Positions 21,571-55,067 of a stretch of 64,000 bases of DNA are shown in pieces. The stretch covers positions 1 to 64,000 of IMG/VR virus record IMGVR_UViG_3300035698_035310; one strand, 5' to 3'. Made by a program: the position numbers and the translations under genes. The notes beneath the pieces were generated by a model that saw only the letters and a program-made list of their open reading frames with translations, was not told the DNA's origin and searched no databases. The stretch's first letter is position 1. Every line of letters starts with the position of its first letter.

Positions 21571-21664
21571 GTCGGATTTCCCTAACTGGTGTGGGTAGAA
21601 TCCATAATATGCACTGGGTGATCCTTATGTGCTGCACGTGGTTCGATTCCACGATCCGGCTCCA
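21571..21664 (+). tRNA. Atypical tRNA-like gene, CAT loop with long variable arm
   Basis: gtcggat/atccggc acceptor, T-arm, CCA; anticodon stem pairs poorly. Confidence 0.4.
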
Positions 21665-21802: not shown

Positions 21803-21910
21803 ATTAACTAAGGTGAACGGTAGTAACCTTTAATGTGCGGCAGTGGTGCAATTCCCTAACTGATTGAGTTCGACTCTCATTCGGGTCTAGATGACAAAAC
21901 ATTATAATAT

Positions 21911-21994
21911 GGACGGTGATGTTAAGACTATGGCTGGGCCAGCGCAAGCCTCTTAAGCTTGTATAAAAGAGTTCGATTCTCTCACCGTCTTCCA
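21911..21994 (+). tRNA. tRNA-Lys(CTT) with enlarged D loop
   Basis: caagc-ctCTTaa-gcttg; CCA. Confidence 0.7.
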
Positions 21995-22535: not shown

Positions 22536-22607
22536 ACCCCAGCCGATGCATTCGGACTCGAGTTTTCGAAACTTGACGGGAAGGTTTGATTCCTTCTTGG
22601 GGTGCCA
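22536..22607 (+). tRNA. tRNA-Arg(TCG)
   Basis: cgagt-ttTCGaa-acttg; short D arm; GCCA. Confidence 0.8.
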
Positions 22608-23683: not shown

Positions 23684-23769
23684 TCGGATATAGGAGAATT
23701 GGTAGACCCAGAAGATTGTTAATCTTCCGCAGCAATGCATTCCAGGTTCGAGTCCTGGTATCCGAGCCA
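23684..23769 (+). tRNA. tRNA-Asn(GTT) with long variable arm
   Basis: gaaga-ttGTTaa-tcttc; gca-gcaa-tgc V arm; GCCA. Confidence 0.8.
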
Positions 23770-25831: not shown

Positions 25832-26101
25832 ATGGATAATAGTACATTAATAGCGTTAGGAAGTTTGTTGTTTGCCATGATTGGTGGATTTTGGGGTGTC
25901 ATAACATACATCCTTGGAATCATCAAGGTGGAAAACGTTGAACGTCGTGGTGTCCAAGAAAAATTATATATGCGCGATGATGTAGCCAAAGATGTAATGA
26001 ACGAAAGTTTAACAGAAGTAAAAAGTACCATCCGTGATACGAATGATAGACTCATACGTGTAGAAACAATATTATATGAAAGAACTGATAGAACAAAATA
26101 A
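25832..26101 (+). CDS. Small late membrane protein (single TM + coiled coil)
   Basis: CATAAATA x2 upstream. Confidence 0.6.
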   Translation: MDNSTLIALGSLLFAMIGGFWGVITYILGIIKVENVERRGVQEKLYMRDDVAKDVMNESLTEVKSTIRDTNDRLIRVETILYERTDRTK

Positions 26102-26147
26102 AATATGGTTTTTAAGCAAAACGGTAATACGTTGTATAAATAGTTAT

Positions 26148-26711
26148 ATGGTTGATTTAAGAAAGAGTTTGCAAACACCAAAAGTTTGCTGTATTGAATG
26201 TAAAACAATATTTAGAACTAATCATTTTGTTAGACACTCGAAGAAGCGATGTATTGAGTGGAAAAAGAAAAACGGCATGATCCCAAAAGGGAAGCGTGGC
26301 GGTTGGAATAAAGGATTAACGAAAATGACTAGTTCGTTGGTCAAAAAAGGAACCGATACTTATCGTCGCCGTTATGAAAATGGTGAATATACACGACGCA
26401 CACAAACCGATGATATAAAGAAACAATATTGGCAAGATTGTAAATTTAAATTCAATGTTTATAATTATCCTGAAATATTTGACTTAAATTTACTCGATAA
26501 ATTTGGGTGGTATCATCCTGTAGAAAATCCAAGTGGCGTAAGTAGAGATCATATTATTTCTGTATCATATGGATGGAAAAATGGTATAGATTCGAATATT
26601 ATTAATCATATAGCCAATTGTAAATTGATGATTCATTTAGAAAATAACAAAAAAAATAATCGATCTGATTTATTATTAGAAGAATTATTACAAAAAATAC
26701 ACTCTATGTAG
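26148..26711 (+). mobile_element. Free-standing HNH-type endonuclease copy 3 (probable start ATG 26148)
   Basis: TATAAATA at 26135; CKFKFNVYNYP...GVSRDH...HIANC. Confidence 0.75.
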
Positions 26712-27454: not shown

Positions 27455-27541
27455 AGAAGTACTTTGTATTGGTGAACTCAGCAGTCTCCAAAACTGTGTC
27501 GCATTTGTGACTGGTAGGTTCGAATCCTACTACTTCTGCCA
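27455..27541 (+). tRNA. tRNA-Trp(CCA) with long variable arm
   Basis: gcagt-ctCCAaa-actgt; gtcgc-attt-gtgac V arm; GCCA. Confidence 0.8.
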
Positions 27542-27932: not shown

Positions 27933-28003
27933 ACCTCCGCTGATGGTTCAGACATAAGCTTGCGAAGCTTGTTGGGAAAGTTCGATTCTTTTCGGGGGTT
28001 CCA
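27933..28003 (+). tRNA. tRNA-Arg(GCG)
   Basis: taagc-ttGCGaa-gcttg; short D arm; TCCA. Confidence 0.75.
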
Positions 28004-28004
28004 A

Positions 28005-28150
28005 TATTGTTATAGCTATGGAAATTAGTTCCTTCTTATCCCAACCTGTAGGTCGTAGGTTCGAATCCTGCTCCTCGCGCCAATTATGCGGGGATAGCTC
28101 AGTGGTAGAGCAACTGGCAATTTTACTGGTTCCAATTATTATAGCAATAT
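28005..28150 (+). ncRNA. Circularly permuted tRNA-like RNA / YrlA variant
   Basis: 3' tRNA half with GCCA, linker attat, then 5' half, all inside atattgttata/tatagcaatat stem; CTATGG-N6-GTTCCTTC variant motif. Confidence 0.75.
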
Positions 28151-28368: not shown

Positions 28369-28446
28369 TGACTAGTAGCTCAGTGGTTTAGAGCGGGGAG
28401 TTCTAAACTCTCGACAGCGTTGGTTCAAATCCAACCTGGTCAACCA
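28369..28446 (+). tRNA. Amber suppressor tRNA (CTA)
   Basis: gggag-ttCTAaa-ctctc; intact cloverleaf; ACCA. Confidence 0.85.
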
Positions 28447-28453
28447 ATACTAA

Positions 28454-28625
28454 GCGGGTATCGTATAATGGTATTATCGCAGCCTTCCATGTGATATGTT
28501 TAACATATCTCAGGTTGAGCCATTTATTGGCTCCTTGAAGGTCGAGGGTTCAGACCCCATCCGGTTTAAGCCCGGTAGACCAACTTAAGCTGATGACGGG
28601 AGTTCGATTCTCCCTACCCGCTCCA
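28454..28625 (+). tRNA. tRNA-Gly(TCC) with 98-nt intron at 37/38 (28490-28587)
   Basis: 5' exon ends cagc-ctTCCa; 3' exon a-gctga...TCCA; exons make a standard Gly cloverleaf. Confidence 0.85.
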
Positions 28626-28629
28626 ATAT

Positions 28630-29421
28630 TTGATAAATAGTTATATGAAATGTAAACAATGTAAAATATCATTTACCCCTATCCCACAAGCAAAAAAAGG
28701 TATATTTTGTTCGCACGATTGTCATAATGTATACCAGCGCGTAAATACTCGTGAGCAATACTTAAAAAATCCCAAACGGTGTATTTTTTGTGATGATATA
28801 ATATCATATAGAGAAAATATAAAAGTGGCGAAGTTTTGCAATAGGTCTTGCGGGGCAAAATATAATAATAAAAGACGTACAGAATGCGGATACACCCCAA
28901 GTCATAAAAAATGGTCTAGTGGTAAAATATCTGCTAAAATGTCATCAAAAATGCGCCGTGCGGATATCAAATCAAGTGTCGTGTTTGGTGATTTTACTAT
29001 AATAACATTTGCTATATGCAATATTACGAATAAACCATATGTTCTACAAACACCGCATGGTGGTATAAAGCAAATATCACCATATATTAAATCATCTAAA
29101 CAGATATATTATGAGCAAGCCAAATTTCGATTTAATGTATATGACTATCCAGATATATTTGATATAACACTTTTAGAAAAATATGGATGGTATACATGTC
29201 CCGGCAAGAAACGAAAAAATCAAAAAAAGAATATAAATGGTGTAAGTAGAGATCATATAATATCTATCAATGATGGATTTAAGAATGGGTATGATCCATA
29301 TATTTTAGCACATCCTGCTAATTGTCGATTGATTAAACAAGTGGATAATGTTAAAAAATTAGATAAATCTAATATGTCATATGACGAGTTATTGATTAAC
29401 ATAAAACAATGGAATGGATAG
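28630..29421 (+). mobile_element. Free-standing HNH-type endonuclease copy 4 (probable start ATG 28646)
   Basis: GATAAATA at 28633; CKQC, FCSHDC, FCNRSC; KFRFNVYDYP...GVSRDH...HPANC. Confidence 0.75.
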
Positions 29422-31358: not shown

Positions 31359-31732
31359 ATGAGTAATGAAAACTCAAGGGTATCGCAGAAAGTTTAGACA
31401 GTATGGATAAAGCTGCGCTAAAAACACTTTCCGATACTCTTAATCGGATATGGGGAATCCCTGAACCAAGGGTCTATTATCCGAATAAACATTTCGAAAA
31501 ACCTGAACCAGTTGAACAGACAATGTTCTCAGTGTTCATTCTTGACGCTGGTCCTAAACGGATTAACGTCATTAAAGAAATCAGATCAATCTTAGGATTG
31601 ACCCTGAAAGAATCAAAGGATTTTGTTGATAATATAGACAAGAGCCTTGTTCAAGAAGACTTAGAAAAATGGGATGCAGATGCATTAGCCGAAACATTAT
31701 CAAATGTTGGAGCAACTGTTGAAGTTTCTTAA
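31359..31732 (+). pseudogene. rplL: Ribosomal protein bL12 (L7/L12) homolog; one A short at 31369-31372, or translated from ATG 31403
   Basis: C-domain F.V.I.DAGPKRINVIKEIRSILGLTLKESKDFVD...GATVEV; RBS AAGGAG before ATG 31359, and a -1 shift gives MSNEKLKGIAESLDSM N-terminal helix. Confidence 0.85.
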
Positions 31733-31844: not shown

Positions 31845-31928
31845 GCGCGTAGCCGGTATGTTGGTACTACCACTGGTCTTCCAAACCAGCGCGAAAGCAT
31901 TGGGGTTTGATTCCCCCTACCCGCTCCA
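31845..31928 (+). tRNA. tRNA-Gly(TCC)
   Basis: ctggt-ctTCCaa-accag; extended V loop; TCCA. Confidence 0.8.
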
Positions 31929-34931: not shown

Positions 34932-35039
34932 TTCCAAGTAGCTCAGATGGTAGAGCGTCTGACTGTGGAACAGATGAGCCTAAAGCTTTGAAGTTCAAAT
35001 TTAATCAGAATGTCGGCGGTTCGATCCCGTCCTTGGAAG
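34932..35039 (+). tRNA. tRNA-Asn(GTT) body with 35-nt insertion in the anticodon
   Basis: tctga-ctGT[insert]Taa-tcaga; U1:A72, G73; no encoded CCA. Confidence 0.75.
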
Positions 35040-35178: not shown

Positions 35179-35270
35179 GCCTCGGTAGCTCAGAAAAGCA
35201 ACGTAAGTTGTAGTGTAGTAGCAGGTGACTGAACCTCACCGTGTCGGTAGTTCGAATCTATCCTGGGGCA
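35179..35270 (+). tRNA. tRNA-Phe(GAA) with hairpin insertion in the D loop
   Basis: ggtga-ctGAAcc-tcacc; caac-gtaa-gttg in D loop; no CCA. Confidence 0.65.
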
Positions 35271-38343: not shown

Positions 38344-38971
38344 ATGCTTAGAGGAACACGTTTGATGACTGGTGCGGAAGCATCTACATACACGAACACT
38401 GTTGACACACTACGGAGGTGTCTTCATCGATAATAATGTCGAAGAAGTTATAGTTCCGTCGTTATGGGAACAGCAGACATTTATTGATAAAGCAGGAAGT
38501 GAAATTGTAAATCAGATGTGGGCATTTGAAGATAAGAAAAATCGCCCCGTATGTTTGATACCAGAAGTTACTGGTGTTATACAAGAAATGTGGCGCGATG
38601 ATTGGAGTAAATCCAAACCAAAGCCATATTCTATTTTTTATGTGAATCGTTGTTATCGTTATGAACGACCACAGAAGGGTAGATATAGAGAATTCACACA
38701 AATCGGATTAGAAATTCTTGGTGATACATCAGGGAATGATTACGATATGGCAATTAATTTATTGCAAAAGTGTCTCGATTGTTTTACTATAGATTATAAA
38801 CTTACAGAAACGGTACAACGCGGTTTGGCGTATTATGTTGATGATGGGTTTGAAGTCGAATGTGAGAAGTTGGGCGCACAGAAGCAAATTGCTGGTGGTG
38901 GTCGATACAATGAAGGTATTGGTTGGGCTATCGGCGTTGATAGATTAATATTGGGGATTGATGATGACTAG
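38344..38971 (+). pseudogene. hisS: Minimal histidyl-tRNA synthetase catalytic core (~208 aa) with +1 frameshift near 38413-38420
   Basis: AAAGGAG RBS, MLRGTR N-terminus in one frame; YRYERPQKGRYREFTQIGLE, RGLAYY, GGGRY, GWAIGVDRL in the other. Confidence 0.8.
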
Positions 38972-43159: not shown

Positions 43160-44974
43160 ATGATTACAAAAACAAACAAACTGCTAATTTGTAAAGCTGG
43201 TGAAGTAGTGACTATTCAGGGTTGGGTTCATAGAACACGCGACCATGGCGGACTTACTTTCATCGATTTCCGCGATTATGAAGGATTGGTGCAGTGTGTT
43301 TTTGACAATTATGGTGGTACGGTTGATTATCATCATTTGCGGGATGAGTCTGTCGTCCGAATGACTGGTGCTGTCAGATTGCGACCAACGGGAACGGAAA
43401 ATCCTAACTTGCGTACAGGCGACATTGAGATTGAAGTTAGTGAGATAGAAATATTGAACGGCGCGGATGTGTTGCCATTTAAGGTGTTTGCTGAAGAAGA
43501 AGAATATACGCCGTCTTTGGAACAACGATTAAAATATCGTTATTTGGACTTGCGTCGTGATGAAAATCAAAAAATGTTGAAGTTGCGGTCTGATGTTCAG
43601 CATTTTATCAGAAACTACATGCATGATCAAGAATTCATAGAAGTTCAAACGCCTACCTTATCGTCGACGTCACCAGAAGGAGCAAGAGATTTTTTGATTC
43701 CGAGCAGAATACACAAAGGTCAAGTATATTCATTAATTCAATCACCACAAATTCAAAAACAATTGCTAATGGCGAGCGGTGTAGAAAAATACTATCAATT
43801 ATGTCGCTGTTGGCGCGATGAGGCGTCACGTTCTGATCGCGCACTTGAATTTACACAGTTGGATTTAGAAATTGGATTTGGCACACAAGAAATGGTGTTT
43901 AGTTTAGTTGAACCATTGTTGACAGAGATGTTTGAATCATATGGACTAGGATGGAAGTTGAATCAATCACCGAGATATGATGATGGCGATCATGGATTTG
44001 TGAGAATACCATATAAAGAATCAATTGAAAAATATGGCACGGATAAACCCGATCTACGGGCGAGTCTTGAAATGACCGATGTGACTATTTTATTCAAGAA
44101 GCAAGGGCCGCAATTCATTGTGGATGCTGTTGAATCAGGACAAATAGTTAAAGCAATACATCTTACGGATGCAGATGGATTAAGTGGTAAATTCTACAAA
44201 GATATTGAAAAATATGCTCAAGAGTTGGGTATGCCGGGATTGGGATATGTCAAATCTGGTTTCAGTGTAGATAATGGCGGAAACCCCGGACCATTGGCTA
44301 AAATGATGAATGCTGGACAATTGACGCAGTTAAGATCAATAGTTGGGTTTAATCCTTTATCTAGTGACACACAGGCAACCTTCCTTATGGTTGGGCATCC
44401 TAAAGCAGTAAACGCATGGGGTGCCGATTTACGGGTTGAGTTATCCAAGCGAACCAAAAACTTTGATGAAGAATCTTATGAGTTTTGTTGGATTGTAGAT
44501 TTTCCATTTTTTGAAGAAAATGAAGAAACGGGAAAGATTGATTTCTCGCATAATCCATTTAGTATGCCAAAAGGTGGCATGGAAGCATTGGAAAATAAAA
44601 ATCTGTTGGATATTTTAGCTTGTCAGTATGACACGGTTCTGAACGGAATGGAAATTAACAGTGGTGGCGAACGAAACTATAATCCAGAAATTATGAAAAA
44701 AGTTTTTGAAATAGTCGGATATGATGAATCGGTAGTTGAAGAAAAGTTTCCTTCGTTGTGGGGGGCGATGAAACTTGGTCATCCCCCTTGCGCTGGTTGT
44801 GCACCGGGTATAGACCGATTGATACAATTATTGATGTTTAAAGATGGTGGGCATATAAGAGATGTGACGGCATTTCCAATAGGTTCAAATGGGATTGATT
44901 TATTAATGGGGGCACCATCTGTGCCATCGGATGAACAAATTAAAGAGTTGGGTATTAAATTTCAGAAGAAATGA
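43160..44974 (+). CDS. aspS: Aspartyl-tRNA synthetase (bacterial GAD-domain type, probably non-discriminating)
   Basis: RDHGGLTFIDFRD, RLKYRYLDLRR, TPEGARDF, QSPQ..KQLLM, WRDE, HNPFSMP, APGIDRL. Confidence 0.97.
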   Translation: MITKTNKLLICKAGEVVTIQGWVHRTRDHGGLTFIDFRDYEGLVQCVFDNYGGTVDYHHLRDESVVRMTGAVRLRPTGTENPNLRTGDIEIEVSEIEILNGADVLPFKVFAEEEEYTPSLEQRLKYRYLDLRRDENQKMLKLRSDVQHFIRNYMHDQEFIEVQTPTLSSTSPEGARDFLIPSRIHKGQVYSLIQSPQIQKQLLMASGVEKYYQLCRCWRDEASRSDRALEFTQLDLEIGFGTQEMVFSLVEPLLTEMFESYGLGWKLNQSPRYDDGDHGFVRIPYKESIEKYGTDKPDLRASLEMTDVTILFKKQGPQFIVDAVESGQIVKAIHLTDADGLSGKFYKDIEKYAQELGMPGLGYVKSGFSVDNGGNPGPLAKMMNAGQLTQLRSIVGFNPLSSDTQATFLMVGHPKAVNAWGADLRVELSKRTKNFDEESYEFCWIVDFPFFEENEETGKIDFSHNPFSMPKGGMEALENKNLLDILACQYDTVLNGMEINSGGERNYNPEIMKKVFEIVGYDESVVEEKFPSLWGAMKLGHPPCAGCAPGIDRLIQLLMFKDGGHIRDVTAFPIGSNGIDLLMGAPSVPSDEQIKELGIKFQKK

Positions 44975-54041: not shown

Positions 54042-55067
54042 TTGAAAATGTTATTAGAACGTGATAAATTTAGAGAAGGTGTGTTTGAACGCGATAGTCA
54101 TAAGTGCGTCATGTGTGATGCACCTGCTCAAGATGCTCATCACATCATTGAACGTAGGCTCTTTACGGATGGTGGCTATTACTTAGATAATGGGTCTAGC
54201 CTGTGTGGTGAACATCATTTAGCAGCCGAATATACAACGCTTTCGCCACAAGAAATTCGTGAAAAAATAGGCATCACTAAAGTCGTATTACCAGAGCATT
54301 TATACCGCGATCAAGAGTATGACAAATGGGGCAACCCTATGTTACCTAACGGCACACGCCTTAAGGGTGATTTGTTTGATGATTTGTCGGTTCAGAAAGC
54401 ATTAAAGGCTGGTGGCGTTTTGGGAAGTTTTACGCACTTAGTGAAATATCCAAGAACATATCATGTAATGTGGAGTCCCGGTTTAAGTAATGATGACCGT
54501 GCGCATAACTCATTGGATCAGTTTGAAGGAAAAAATGTTGTCGTCCATTTGAAGATGGACGGTGAAAACGCAAGTTTTTATAATGATCATTATCACGCAC
54601 GTTCGTTAGATACTGTTAATCATCCATCTCGCAAATGGGCTAAAATGCTTCATGCGCGTATTATGGGTGATATACCAGAAAGCTGGCGTGTGTGTGCTGA
54701 GAATTTGTATGCTGAACATTCGATTCATTATGACGATCTTGAAGCCTTCGTTCTTGCTTTTTCTATATGGAATGAAAAAAATGAATGCCTTGGTTGGGAT
54801 GAAACCCAAGATTGGTTTGAGTTGTTAGAAGTTCCACAAGTTCCAGTTTTGTATGAAGGATTATTTTCAGAAGAAAAGTTGCATGAAATTGAATCAACGC
54901 TTGATTTTGAAATTGATGAAGGATATGTGATGAGAACGCGAGATAGTTTCCATTATAATGACTTTCGGCAAAATGTCGCTAAATATGTTCGTAAAGGGCA
55001 TGTTCAACATTCAACCGAAGGACACTGGATCAATCGACCAATTACGCCTAATGAACTGAGAAAATAA
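54042..55067 (+). CDS. HNH domain-RNA ligase (Rnl2-like nucleotidyltransferase) fusion
   Basis: CVMC...DAHHI...N..LC..HH; KYPRTYH, KMDGEN, AEN, EGYVMR, KYVR. Confidence 0.85.
   Translation: MKMLLERDKFREGVFERDSHKCVMCDAPAQDAHHIIERRLFTDGGYYLDNGSSLCGEHHLAAEYTTLSPQEIREKIGITKVVLPEHLYRDQEYDKWGNPMLPNGTRLKGDLFDDLSVQKALKAGGVLGSFTHLVKYPRTYHVMWSPGLSNDDRAHNSLDQFEGKNVVVHLKMDGENASFYNDHYHARSLDTVNHPSRKWAKMLHARIMGDIPESWRVCAENLYAEHSIHYDDLEAFVLAFSIWNEKNECLGWDETQDWFELLEVPQVPVLYEGLFSEEKLHEIESTLDFEIDEGYVMRTRDSFHYNDFRQNVAKYVRKGHVQHSTEGHWINRPITPNELRK

What the first reader, a model, noticed from the sequence alone, without database searches (positions are those of the whole stretch)
28454..28625. tRNA-Gly(TCC) with a 98-nt highly structured intron at the canonical 37/38 site
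Seen: perfect exons. The insert folds as gatatg/catatc, then aggttg/caactt enclosing gagcca/tggctc and a ggtc/gacc junction with ggg-ttcaga-ccc and ccgg-tttaagc-ccgg. It is too short for group I, has no terminal G, and the 5' exon does not end in U. Established: bacterial tRNA introns are self-splicing group I/II, while 37/38 short introns are archaeal/eukaryotic and need an endonuclease plus ligase. Inference: a protein-assisted or novel ribozyme-based tRNA splicing route in a phage, possibly a nuclease-proof stored tRNA. The last hairpin loosely recalls twister/twister-sister P4, but I cannot place the other core elements.
Basis: partly seen in the sequence, partly recalled or inferred. Interest (0 to 1): 0.8.

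Follow-up and report, generated by a model that had tools for sequence, protein, structure and literature searches.

The report
Structured insert splitting a megaphage tRNA-Gly
A giant salt-lake phage carries a glycine tRNA gene cut in two, inside its anticodon loop, by a conserved 98-base folded RNA that is not a self-splicing intron of any described type; similar unexplained inserts have been reported in other giant phages, and nobody knows how, or whether, they are removed.

Summary
Window 28454-28625 is a T4-like tRNA-Gly(UCC) gene with encoded CCA, split in the anticodon loop by a 98-nt insert (Rfam tRNA 38.9 bits; the exons are 85% identical to T4 tRNA-Gly). The insert folds on its own (z -5.2).

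A homologous 98-nt insert sits at the same site in a relative whose neighbouring protein is only 62% identical. All 27 base pairs are kept there, four through compensating changes. A third relative has the same tRNA uninterrupted.

Two details change:
- The homolog places the insert between nt 36 and 37, not at the canonical 37/38 site.
- The aggttg/caactt helix is better replaced by tcagg/cttga.

The insert is not group I or II, has no bulge-helix-bulge, and is not twister or any other Rfam family. It is not a repeat and does not code for protein.

It lies beside an HNH-like gene family found next to tRNA-Gly(UCC) in all 8 contexts examined. The phage also encodes an HNH-RNA-ligase fusion.

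"Enigmatic" introns at the same site are already described in Lak megaphages (2019). I therefore rate this a new structural variant of a known, mechanistically unsolved kind. Splicing is untested because no RNA data exist for this phage. My best guess is protein-dependent cutting and ligation (0.4). The main rival is that the insert is never removed (0.3).

The parts
28454..28489 (+). 5' exon of tRNA-Gly(UCC): acceptor strand, T4-like D arm, anticodon-stem 5' strand, then C32 U33 U34 C35 C36 (A37 if the cut is read at 37/38).
   Evidence: Rfam tRNA alignment. 85% identical to T4 tRNA-Gly. The D stem covaries with the homolog: U-A to C-G and G-U to G-C.
28490..28587 (+). 98-nt intervening sequence. 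By comparison with L063 the true limits are most likely 28489-28586, between nt 36 and 37.
   Evidence: 77 of 98 positions are identical to the L063 insert. An empty-site relative exists.
28493..28509 (+). Hairpin 1: GAUAUG / CAUAUC, loop UUUAA. It starts 3-4 nt after the 5' junction.
   Evidence: All 6 pairs are identical in both sequences. Lak introns also start with a hairpin.
28510..28538 (+). Hairpin 2: GAGCC(A)/(U)GGCUC, extended across a UU bulge by UCAGG/CUUGA.
   Evidence: 10 pairs: one compensatory change (U-A to A-U) and two one-sided changes, none broken.
28540..28581 (+). Y-shaped domain. GGUC/GACC closes hairpin 3 (GGG/CCC, 28546-48/28555-57) and hairpin 4 (CCGG/CCGG, 28561-64/28572-75, 7-nt loop UUUAAGC).
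   Evidence: hairpin 3: G-C to A-U. The hairpin 4 arm is letter-for-letter the anticodon arm of many viral tRNA(UAA) genes. In L063 its loop is UUUGAAU, and both versions also fit T-loop rules.
28582..28587 (+). Single-stranded 3' tail of the insert (AACUU-A) leading into the 3' junction.
   Evidence: Unpaired in the consensus fold. Alternative pairings with the hairpin 4 loop are not distinguishable from chance.
28588..28625 (+). 3' exon: A38, anticodon-stem 3' strand, 4-nt variable loop, T arm, acceptor strand, discriminator U, encoded CCA.
   Evidence: Identical (39 of 39, counting 28587) to the homolog.
28645..29421 (+). Free-standing putative homing endonuclease. It has two N-terminal FCS-type zinc fingers and a C-terminal His-Me-finger (HNH-like) domain with invariant D-H, HPANC and N..K. 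It begins 19 nt after the tRNA.
   Evidence: phrog_23051 plus a weak HNH match. Invariant motifs, zinc finger, HNH / GmrSD_C / NUMOD3 neighbours in the ESM Atlas. tRNA-Gly(UCC) lies beside the gene in all 8 homolog contexts.
31845..31928 (+). Second tRNA-Gly(UCC) gene with an intact anticodon loop and an 11-nt variable loop carrying a GAAA mini-hairpin. It could back up the interrupted copy.
   Evidence: Read. ARAGORN calls it at a relaxed threshold. An analogous gene lies at L063:4937-5022.
54042..55067 (+). HNH-Rnl2 fusion: an ATP-dependent RNA ligase with an N-terminal HNH domain. It is the candidate enzyme for sealing the exons, and conceivably for cutting them.
   Evidence: PF09414 at E 3e-29. 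phrog_24030 'RNA ligase' at E 3e-130, with HNH PHROG matches at residues 8-65. The family is confined to jumbo and huge phages and the fusion is noted in PMC7824862.

Best explanation
This is a real intervening sequence of the 'megaphage tRNA intron' kind. A 98-nt RNA that folds on its own was inserted precisely between nt 36 and 37 of a T4-like tRNA-Gly(UCC) gene, in a phage of at least 570 kb from a salt lake.

Shown:
- The exons still make a tRNA.
- The insert folds into hairpin 1, hairpin 2 and a Y-shaped two-hairpin domain. Both junctions are left in single-stranded linkers (CUUCC^AUGU and AACUU^AA) at a multi-helix junction on top of the anticodon stem.
- This fold is maintained by selection in a diverged relative.
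- An uninterrupted allele exists.
- The gene sits beside an HNH-like endonuclease family that is tied to tRNA-Gly(UCC) genes.

Inferred:
- The insert is transcribed with the tRNA and removed by proteins rather than by its own catalysis.
- A metal-dependent nuclease cuts at the two exposed junctions, leaving 3'-OH and 5'-phosphate ends. Candidates are the HNH domain of the HNH-Rnl2 fusion, a host RNase, or the neighbouring HNH-like protein.
- The phage's ATP-dependent RNA ligase reseals the anticodon loop. This is the chemistry T4 uses to repair a broken anticodon loop.
- At the DNA level, the insert interrupts the conserved anticodon-loop sequence that the neighbouring endonuclease family probably targets. 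That would protect the carrier genome and let insert and endonuclease spread together.
For: - Exons: Rfam tRNA at 38.9 bits with a 100-nt insertion; 85% identical to T4 tRNA-Gly, in two pieces contiguous in T4.
- Exons still under tRNA-type selection: the D stem covaries and the 3' exon is 39/39 identical, although the flanking protein is only 62% identical.
- Insert structure: z -5.2 and -4.5. 27 of 27 pairs are kept in both sequences, with 2 two-sided and 2 one-sided compensating changes. About 11% of paired positions differ against about 30-35% of unpaired ones.
- Empty site: a marine-sediment relative has ..GGTTTCCAACCTGATGA.. directly upstream of the homologous ORF, which is 85% identical in nucleotides.
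- Precedent: Lak megaphage tRNA-Gly(TCC), Tyr, Phe and Thr carry 79-114-nt inserts at the same place. Each starts with a hairpin and ends in a Y-shaped domain. A 2026 survey reports intronic sequences in tRNAs of many jumbo phages.
- Neighbouring endonuclease family next to tRNA-Gly(UCC) in 8 of 8 contexts.
- HNH-Rnl2 ligase in the same window.
- HNH nucleases leave 3'-OH and 5'-phosphate ends, which Rnl2-type ligases need (established enzymology, not tested here).
Against: - There is no RNA evidence at all. No run of this phage's RNA was found, and the only laid data are DNA contigs.
- A second, uninterrupted tRNA-Gly(UCC) gene exists in both phages, so the interrupted copy need not work as a tRNA.
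- Only two distinct insert sequences are known, so the covariation evidence is thin. In the shuffle control 120 of 500 shuffles reach the observed values.
- No nuclease is known to cut such junctions.
- The HNH-ligase fusion is common in jumbo phages and is usually read as RNA repair plus DNA attack (PMC7824862). Its presence is not specific evidence.
- In the marine relative the endonuclease gene sits beside an uninterrupted tRNA, so the insert is not required for immunity.
Confidence: 0.4

Rival explanations
1. The insert is never removed. Either the tRNA body serves as a scaffold (RNase P and 3'-end processing, stability) that displays a 98-nt structured RNA with its own function, such as a decoy or regulator. 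Or the gene is a copy disabled by a selfish insertion and tolerated because a second tRNA-Gly(UCC) exists.
For: - A redundant intact tRNA-Gly(UCC) is present in both phages.
- The same phage carries many tRNA-like genes with expansions in the D, variable and anticodon loops and with degenerate features. Oddly built tRNAs are the rule here.
- No known splicing signal was found.
- A conserved fold and a conserved tRNA body are equally expected for a scaffolded RNA.
Against: - Removal at 36/37 restores a textbook 7-nt loop, CUUCCAA, in both lineages.
- The loop-flanking letters CCUUCC and AAGCUGA are identical in both, whereas the D arm diverged.
- The pure-pseudogene version fits poorly with a 39/39 identical 3' exon, D-stem covariation and 27/27 pairs kept in the insert.
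- Uninterrupted alleles in relatives and the parallel Lak cases suggest a gain-and-loss dynamic typical of introns.
Confidence: 0.3
2. The insert is a new small ribozyme. It cleaves at one or both junctions, and either religates itself or leaves 2',3'-cyclic phosphate and 5'-OH ends for an RtcB-type ligase.
For: - Its size (98 nt) and multi-helix junction architecture fall in the range of small self-cleaving ribozymes.
- The fold is strongly stable and conserved.
- Several unpaired letters are conserved: the UU bulge, AGAC in the hairpin 3 loop, UUU in the hairpin 4 loop and the UA linker.
Against: - No Rfam ribozyme family reaches significance. The best is twister-sister at 12.9 bits against a gathering score of 34, seen only in the window sequence.
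- The loop letters that resemble twister are not conserved.
- Conserved unpaired letters mean little with two sequences at 79% identity.
- No RtcB was seen among the Pfam matches of the 59 ORFs scanned, though only the top 25 of 44 families were listed and the rest of the genome was not available.
Confidence: 0.12
3. The insert carries a tRNA-like handle, or forms an overlapping second tRNA that shares the T arm and 3' acceptor strand. Ordinary tRNA-processing enzymes (RNase P, RNase Z) then cut it out, as could be imagined for the Lak introns, which contain a nested mini-tRNA.
For: - ARAGORN calls a tRNA-Ser(UGA) at L063:1285-1373, and at a relaxed threshold a tRNA-Leu(UAA) at the same place in the window.
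- Hairpin 4 is identical to real tRNA(UAA) anticodon arms. Its loop fits both anticodon-loop and T-loop rules in both sequences.
- Lak introns end in an acceptor + D + T-arm element 1-2 nt before the 3' junction.
Against: - The Rfam tRNA model finds nothing in insert plus 3' exon in either sequence.
- The alternative acceptor stem has only 4 of 7 pairs in the window, whereas GGUC/GACC pairs perfectly in both.
- There is no GG in the D-like loop and no true UUCRA T loop.
- The closing stem ends 5 nt before the junction, not at an RNase Z-type distance.
- RNase P/Z cuts would leave hairpins 1 and 2 attached to the 5' exon.
Confidence: 0.1

Closest known systems
'Enigmatic' tRNA introns of Lak megaphages (Devoto et al. 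2019, PMC6784885; also noted in a 2026 jumbo-phage survey, PMC13037316)
   Same: - Host is a phage of more than 500 kb with a large tRNA array.
- The insert lies in the anticodon loop at 36/37 (ambiguous with 37/38), including in a tRNA-Gly(TCC) whose 5' exon resembles that of L063.
- Length is 79-114 nt.
- It starts with a hairpin a few nt after the 5' junction and ends with a stem-closed two-hairpin domain.
- It has no Rfam match.
- Alleles with and without the insert exist.
- Relatives of the same HNH-like family sit in the Lak tRNA cluster.
   Different: - Lak inserts are AU-rich and contain a recognisable mini-tRNA: a 7-8-bp acceptor stem and a true UUCGAAU T arm that ends 1-2 nt from the junction.
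- This insert has an extra hairpin, only a 4-bp closing stem, and no true T loop.
- There is no sequence similarity: the covariance model R1 finds nothing in the Lak loci.
- This phage appears to use the standard genetic code.
Group I introns in bacterial tRNA anticodon loops (cyanobacterial tRNA-Leu(UAA), Azoarcus tRNA-Ile)
   Same: An intervening sequence in the anticodon loop of a bacterial-type tRNA gene, sometimes mobile with homing endonucleases.
   Different: - About 200 nt or more with a P3-P9 core, U at -1 and a terminal G.
- Here the insert is 98 nt, has C (or A) at -1, ends in U/A (C/A in the homolog), and has no Rfam Intron_gpI match.
Protein-spliced tRNA introns of archaea and eukaryotes (bulge-helix-bulge; EndA/Sen endonuclease plus RtcB or Trl1)
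   Same: A short, non-catalytic insert next to the anticodon. Removal would need an endonuclease and a ligase.
   Different: - No 3-4-3 bulge-helix-bulge can be drawn at the junctions.
- The position is 36/37.
- The host signals are bacterial: IF3, L7/L12, ClpX and encoded CCA.
- No splicing endonuclease was seen in the window.
- The available ligase is the ATP-dependent Rnl2 type, which needs the opposite end chemistry.
Collaborative homing: the cyanophage psbA group I intron with the adjacent free-standing endonuclease F-CphI (from my own knowledge), and T-even SegB in the tRNA cluster (mentioned in PMC13096335)
   Same: A free-standing endonuclease gene immediately downstream of an interrupted gene, and an endonuclease family that lives in phage tRNA clusters.
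   Different: Neither the cleavage site nor the cleavage activity of this protein is known. One relative carries the endonuclease gene beside an uninterrupted tRNA. The insert is not a self-splicing intron.
T4 anticodon-loop repair (PrrC cut, healed by Pnk and sealed by Rnl1) and jumbo-phage RNA-repair ligases
   Same: A phage ATP-dependent ligase reseals a broken tRNA anticodon loop. That is the ligation step I propose.
   Different: That process is a repair of host-inflicted damage, not removal of an encoded insert. No polynucleotide kinase was identified in the window.

Membership tests
Group I intron | Conserved catalytic core (P3-P9), typically 200 nt or more | tested here: not met
   The insert is 98 nt. 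There is no Rfam Intron_gpI match even at E up to 10 with permissive filters.
Group I intron | U at the last exon position (U.G in P1) and G as the last intron base | tested here: not met
   The 5' exon ends in C36 (or A37). The insert ends in U or A in the window and in C or A in L063.
Group II intron | Six-domain structure with domain V, several hundred nt | tested here: not met
   98 nt, with no Rfam group II match.
Archaeal/eukaryal protein-spliced tRNA intron | Bulge-helix-bulge (3-nt bulge, 4-bp helix, 3-nt bulge) presenting both splice sites | tested here: not met
   Checked by hand on both sequences. The 4 nt before the 3' bulge (AACU / AAAU) cannot pair with C32-U33-U34-C35. The consensus fold leaves both junctions in plain single strands.
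Archaeal/eukaryal protein-spliced tRNA intron | Canonical position 37/38 | tested here: inconclusive
   The window sequence allows 36/37 or 37/38. In L063 the base after C36 is U, so 37/38 would give a pyrimidine at position 37. This favours 36/37.
Archaeal/eukaryal protein-spliced tRNA intron | EndA/Sen-type splicing endonuclease in the genome or its host | not testable with these tools
   None appears among the listed Pfam matches of 59 window ORFs. Only 64 kb of at least 570 kb was readable, and the host is unknown.
Twister / twister-sister ribozyme | Match to the family covariance model, and conserved loop letters (AAGC) that form the pseudoknots | tested here: not met
   Twister-sister scores 12.9 bits against a gathering score of 34 in the window and gives no match in L063. 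There is no twister match. The loop is UUUAAGC in the window and UUUGAAU in L063.
Megaphage (Lak-type) tRNA intron | Insert of about 80-115 nt in the anticodon loop of a tRNA of a very large phage, at 36/37, with uninterrupted alleles in relatives | tested here: met
   for this locus. for Lak.
Megaphage (Lak-type) tRNA intron | Nested tRNA-like element with a 7-bp acceptor stem and a true T arm inside the insert | tested here: not met
   The tRNA covariance model gives no match inside the insert. The closing stem is only 4 bp and the 7-nt loop has U where a T loop has C56. Compare the Lak fold.
Megaphage (Lak-type) tRNA intron | Sequence homology to Lak inserts | tested here: not met
   Model R1 finds no match in L080 or L083.
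Miniature transposable element / dispersed repeat | Several copies, terminal inverted repeats, target-site duplication | tested here: not met
   There is a single copy in the window and the fetched loci. No other copy was found in IMG/VR, JGI metagenomes or GTDB genomes. No inverted ends or duplicated target are visible.
Protein-coding insert | Conserved open reading frame | tested here: not met
   A 30-codon ORF (28496-28588) fills the insert in the window. In L063 the same frame stops after 7 codons (reading).

The most novel reading that the evidence does not exclude
Very large phages of bacteria may have their own protein-only tRNA splicing pathway. Structured inserts placed between nt 36 and 37 would be cut out by a metal-dependent nuclease that leaves 3'-OH and 5'-phosphate ends, perhaps the HNH domain of the jumbo-phage HNH-Rnl2 fusion itself. 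The fused ligase would then seal the exons. At the DNA level, the inserts would shield the tRNA gene from the tRNA-Gly(UCC)-associated homing endonuclease next door. This would be a third, independently evolved kind of tRNA splicing, beside self-splicing group I introns and the archaeal/eukaryal endonuclease route.
Probability: 0.12. Interest if true: 0.9.

Novelty: new variant of a known kind. Interest (0 to 1): 0.6.

Why it matters
Textbooks say bacterial tRNA introns are self-splicing and that short protein-spliced ones belong to archaea and eukaryotes. Inserts of 80-115 nt in megaphage tRNAs break that rule, and they have stayed unexplained since 2019.

This locus adds four things:
- A second, structurally different insert family at the very same site.
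- Evidence that its fold is under selection.
- An empty-site allele.
- A tight link to an endonuclease gene family specific for tRNA-Gly(UCC).

It also offers a compact, testable system: a 172-nt transcript plus two candidate phage proteins. If the insert is spliced, this would define a new RNA-processing route in bacteria. If it is not, it would be a natural example of a tRNA-scaffolded structured RNA.

There is a practical point too. Default tRNA finders miss this gene and about ten other odd tRNA genes in the window, so tRNA counts for huge phages are likely underestimates.

Tried and rejected
- Known RNA families: Rfam was run at gathering and at E up to 10, on the region and on insert plus 3' exon, in both sequences. 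Only the outer tRNA matched. The twister-sister, GIR1 and 'freshwater-2' matches are noise.
- Nested or overlapping tRNA: ARAGORN's Ser/Leu calls are not backed by the tRNA covariance model or by acceptor-stem pairing in the window.
- Bulge-helix-bulge: checked by hand, none.
- Coding: the 30-codon ORF is not conserved.
- Repeat or mobile element: no second copy.
- More homologs: eight IMG/VR scans, one JGI metagenome scan and one GTDB scan, using exact and degenerate patterns of the insert, the 3' exon and both 5' exon types. They returned the source contig itself, chance matches, one Lak-like contig and about 120 uninterrupted tRNA-Gly genes. Only the route through the neighbouring protein gave a true homolog.
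- Tertiary pairings: an 8-bp helix between the hairpin 4 loop and the 3' junction has one compensatory change, but equally long chance helices occur in the same sequence, so I do not rely on it.
- RNA evidence: the only RNA-labelled run holds relatives, not this phage.
PDB sequence search, NCBIfam and a profile comparison with the ligase's HNH domain were uninformative for the C-terminal domain. Its nuclease assignment therefore rests on motifs, PHROG matches and ESM Atlas neighbours.
- Alternative genetic code: recoding TAG adds almost no coding length.
Full report
WHAT IS THERE

Window 28454-28625 (+ strand) reads as a tRNA-Gly(UCC) gene with an encoded CCA end, interrupted in the anticodon loop. 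When the small region is searched, the Rfam tRNA model covers 28454-28622 at 38.9 bits (gathering score 29, E 6e-7) and places 100 nt in the anticodon loop. ARAGORN misses the gene with and without its intron option, and the whole-window Rfam run does not report it.

The two exon pieces match T4-family tRNA-Gly at 85% identity. In T4 those two pieces are contiguous, spanning 74 nt, so the insertion is precise relative to a tRNA known to function. The exons are good but not perfect. There is a G27.A43 mismatch, shared by relatives seen in the lake reads, and a U13.U22 mismatch as in T4 tRNA-Gly.

The insert alone folds at -38.3 kcal/mol, z -5.24. In the fold of the whole gene the acceptor, D, anticodon and T stems all persist, z -4.1.

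WHERE IT COMES FROM

The window is part of IMG/VR contig 3300035698_035310 (359 kb). The same sequence lies on a 570,750-bp metagenome contig from a salt lake.

The window encodes bacterial-type translation and housekeeping proteins:
- AspRS, a HisRS fragment, a fatty-acid desaturase and thymidine kinase.
- EF-G, IF3, L7/L12, ClpX, TelA and an OmpA-family protein.

It carries about 30 called tRNAs plus about ten tRNA-like genes that standard tools miss. Standard code 11 fits the ORFs. This is a very large phage of a bacterium. The INPHARED phage collection holds no DNA-level match to this region apart from tRNA genes.

COMPARATIVE EVIDENCE

The ORF immediately downstream (28645-29421) has a 62%-identical homolog, P0002. 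On its contigs the same arrangement recurs. L063:1202-1373 is a 172-nt tRNA-Gly(UCC) gene with a 98-nt insert at the same place, and it is identical in three independent assemblies.

| Segment | Identity, window vs L063 |
|---|---|
| 3' exon | 39 of 39 |
| Insert | 77 of 98 |
| 5' exon, nt 1-35 | 26 of 35 |

The D stem covaries: U-A to C-G and G-U to G-C.

In L063 the base after C36 is U, and the 3' side reads ..AUC-AAGCUGA. A normal loop (CUUCCAA, with a purine at position 37) therefore requires excision between nt 36 and 37. The window sequence is compatible with that reading. Lak tRNA-Tyr, Phe and Thr inserts likewise begin with U after position 36.

A third relative shows the empty site. 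A 383-nt contig from a marine-sediment run aligns to 28590-28838 at 85% identity. Directly upstream it continues ..GTATAATGGCTATTACCCCAGGTTTCCAAC, which is an uninterrupted tRNA-Gly(UCC).

Pattern scans found no further homolog. They covered IMG/VR, JGI metagenomes and GTDB genomes, using the insert, the 3' exon and both 5' exon types. About 120 tRNA-Gly genes that share the window's 5' start all have intact anticodon loops.

ANATOMY OF THE INSERT

The consensus fold of the two sequences has five elements:
- Hairpin 1: 28493-98 / 28504-09.
- Hairpin 2: 28517-21 / 28529-33, extended over a UU bulge by UCAGG 28510-14 / CUUGA 28534-38.
- A closing stem GGUC 28540-43 / GACC 28578-81, which encloses hairpins 3 and 4.
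- Hairpin 3: 28546-48 / 28555-57.
- Hairpin 4: 28561-64 / 28572-75, with a 7-nt loop.

All 27 pairs form in both sequences. Two pairs changed on both sides and two on one side, and none is broken. Most differences lie in loops and linkers. With only two sequences this is suggestive, not proof: 120 of 500 column shuffles do as well.

Both junctions lie in single-stranded linkers, CUUCC^AUGU and AACUU^AA.

Hairpin 4 (CCGG-UUUAAGC-CCGG) is letter-for-letter the anticodon arm of many viral tRNA(UAA) genes. 36 of 60 exact matches elsewhere in IMG/VR are such tRNAs. In L063 the loop is UUUGAAU. Both versions obey anticodon-loop rules (U33, purine 37) and, apart from U in place of C56, T-loop rules.

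WHAT IT IS NOT

- Group I: too short, no core match, no U at -1, no terminal G.
- Group II: no match.
- Bulge-helix-bulge: none can be drawn at the junctions.
- Twister or twister-sister: 12.9 bits against a gathering score of 34, in the window only, and the look-alike loop letters are not conserved.
- Nested tRNA: ARAGORN's Ser(UGA) and Leu(UAA) calls, which reuse the outer T arm, are not supported by the tRNA covariance model. The alternative acceptor stem has only 4 of 7 pairs in the window.
- Repeat: covariance model R1 finds no other copy in the window or in 12 loci.
- Protein-coding: the 30-codon ORF at 28496-28588 is not conserved in L063.
- Assembly artefact: the insert stands at depth 32 in one contig with no joint that skips it.

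NEIGHBOURHOOD

The ORF at 28645-29421 belongs to phrog_23051.
- Its N-terminus has two FCS-type zinc fingers.
- Its C-terminal domain has invariant D-H, HPANC and N..K motifs.
- That domain's ESM Atlas neighbours include HNH, GmrSD_C and NUMOD3-bearing viral clusters.
- A paralog at 26076-26711 matches an endonuclease VII PHROG.

I read it as a free-standing His-Me-finger homing endonuclease.

Every homolog context I examined has a tRNA-Gly(UCC) gene within 250 nt: the window, L063, L067, L071, L076, L077, L078 and L079. In four of them the ORF's 3' end runs antisense into the tRNA, which produces the spurious G-x-E-P..LEG tails seen in the alignment. The marine-sediment relative shows the same linkage.

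More distant homologs in Cronobacter phage GAP32, Vibrio phage 2.275.O and Lak-A1 sit inside tRNA clusters. In Lak-A1 the homolog lies between two intron-bearing tRNAs.

Elsewhere in the window, 54042-55067 encodes an N-terminal HNH domain fused to an Rnl2-type RNA ligase (PF09414; phrog_24030 at E 3e-130). This family is confined to jumbo and huge phages, and its closest cultured member is in Salicola phage SCTP-2. It has been noted before as part of RNA repair (PMC7824862).

PRECEDENT

Devoto et al. (PMC6784885; preprint 10.1101/356790) reported 'enigmatic' introns in Lak megaphage tRNA-Tyr, Phe, Thr and Gly(TCC). These inserts had no Rfam match, some contained a possible tRNA, and alleles with and without them existed.

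I fetched the Lak-A2 tRNA-Gly(TCC) gene (L080:3001-3159). Its 87-nt insert folds as a 5' hairpin, an A/U linker, and a stem-closed two-hairpin element with a true T arm. A 2026 survey again notes intronic sequences in tRNAs of many jumbo phages (PMC13037316).

I found no paper that reports a splicing mechanism.

This insert shares site, size class and overall layout with the Lak inserts. It has no sequence similarity to them and no nested T-arm tRNA.

HOW IT MOST LIKELY WORKS

Shown:
- A precise, heritable insert with a conserved structure, in an otherwise well-kept tRNA gene.
- Junctions that are exposed as single strands.
- An uninterrupted allele in a relative.
- An endonuclease gene family linked to tRNA-Gly(UCC).
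- A phage RNA ligase in the same window.

Inferred:
- The pre-tRNA is cut at both junctions by a protein nuclease and resealed by the Rnl2-type ligase. HNH-type cuts would give the 3'-OH and 5'-phosphate ends that this ligase needs.
- At the DNA level the insert breaks up the sequence that the neighbouring endonuclease probably recognises.

I put this at 0.4.

The main rival (0.3) is that the insert is never removed. Both phages carry a second, intact tRNA-Gly(UCC): 31845-31928 in the window and L063:4937-5022. This phage is also full of oddly expanded tRNA-like genes. The other rivals are a new small ribozyme (0.12) and processing through a tRNA-like handle (0.1).

No RNA data exist for this phage, so none of these is tested.

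VERDICT

It is not the first of its kind. I rate it a new structural variant of the known, mechanistically unsolved megaphage tRNA inserts, with interest 0.6.

Noticed in passing
window 34932-35039: A second tRNA has an anticodon-loop insert of about 35 nt that folds as a two-tier hairpin (Rfam tRNA 54 bits). Its identity is ambiguous: ARAGORN with the intron option says His(GUG), but Asn(GUU) or Lys(UUU) are possible depending on where the insert is cut. The insert shares TGAGCC..GCT..TTGAAG with the 98-nt insert, which may be chance.
   Followed up: partly
window 35179-35270; L144:163-246: A tRNA(GAA) carries a 26-nt D loop with a CAAC-GUAA-GUUG hairpin (Rfam 36.7 bits). Separately, a tRNA-Gly(UCC) with a hairpin inserted in its D loop lies on a 376-kb IMG/VR contig. 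D-loop expansions therefore recur in huge-phage tRNAs.
   Followed up: no
window 31845-31928; L063:4937-5022: Each phage has a second tRNA-Gly(UCC) gene with an intact anticodon loop but an 11-nt variable loop holding a GNRA mini-hairpin. Default ARAGORN and Rfam miss the one in the window.
   Followed up: partly
window 21571-21664, 21906-21994, 22536-22606, 23684-23769, 27455-27541, 27933-27994: About ten further tRNA-like genes with a T arm, matching acceptor strands and CCA are not called by default tools. They include Trp(CCA) with a long variable arm, Lys(CUU) with a D-loop hairpin, an 86-nt Asn, and an Arg-like gene with a small D arm. The real tRNA count of this phage is well above the 28 that ARAGORN reports.
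   Followed up: partly
window 28040-28083 and 28088-28133: A tRNA 3' half ending in CCA is followed 4 nt later by a tRNA 5' half whose acceptor strand is complementary to it, which looks like a permuted layout. The anticodon-stem halves do not match, so these are more likely gene fragments left by recombination.
   Followed up: partly
window 28369-28446: An amber-suppressor tRNA (anticodon CUA; ARAGORN labels it 'Pyl') lies 7 nt upstream of the interrupted tRNA-Gly. Yet TAG behaves as a normal stop in this window (10 of 59 ORF ends), and recoding it adds almost no coding length.
   Followed up: partly
window 54042-55067: An HNH-Rnl2 RNA ligase fusion. Full-length relatives occur only in jumbo and huge phages (Salicola SCTP-2, Ralstonia RsoM2USA, Caulobacter CcrBL9 and CcrSC, Acinetobacter ME3, Halogranum HGTV-1, uncultured huge phages). 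Lak phages show only a partial match.
   Followed up: partly
L067:3001-3790, L076:1501-2291, L077:1501-2306, L078:1501-2295: In four homologs of the endonuclease gene, the called ORF runs antisense into a tRNA-Gly(UCC) gene. The predicted proteins therefore end in a tail (G-x-E-P-x-T..LEG) that is simply the reverse complement of the T arm. This is an annotation artefact, but it marks how tightly the gene abuts the tRNA.
   Followed up: yes
window 28454-28625 versus L063:1202-1373: Divergence is mosaic. The 3' exon is 39/39 identical and the insert 79% identical. The 5' exon has a different D arm: T4-like in the window, Lak-like in L063. This suggests recombination or gene conversion with a break near the anticodon stem.
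   Followed up: no
window 26076-26711: A paralog of the endonuclease gene shares its C-terminal domain and matches an endonuclease VII PHROG. It lies 32 nt upstream of tRNA-Cys(GCA).
   Followed up: no
window 31403-31732, 38372-38971, 43160-44974 and elsewhere: The window carries translation genes unusual for a phage: ribosomal protein L7/L12, a 199-aa HisRS-like fragment, a full bacterial-type AspRS with a GAD domain, and EF-G and IF3. The ORFs for EF-G and IF3 were not pinned individually.
   Followed up: no
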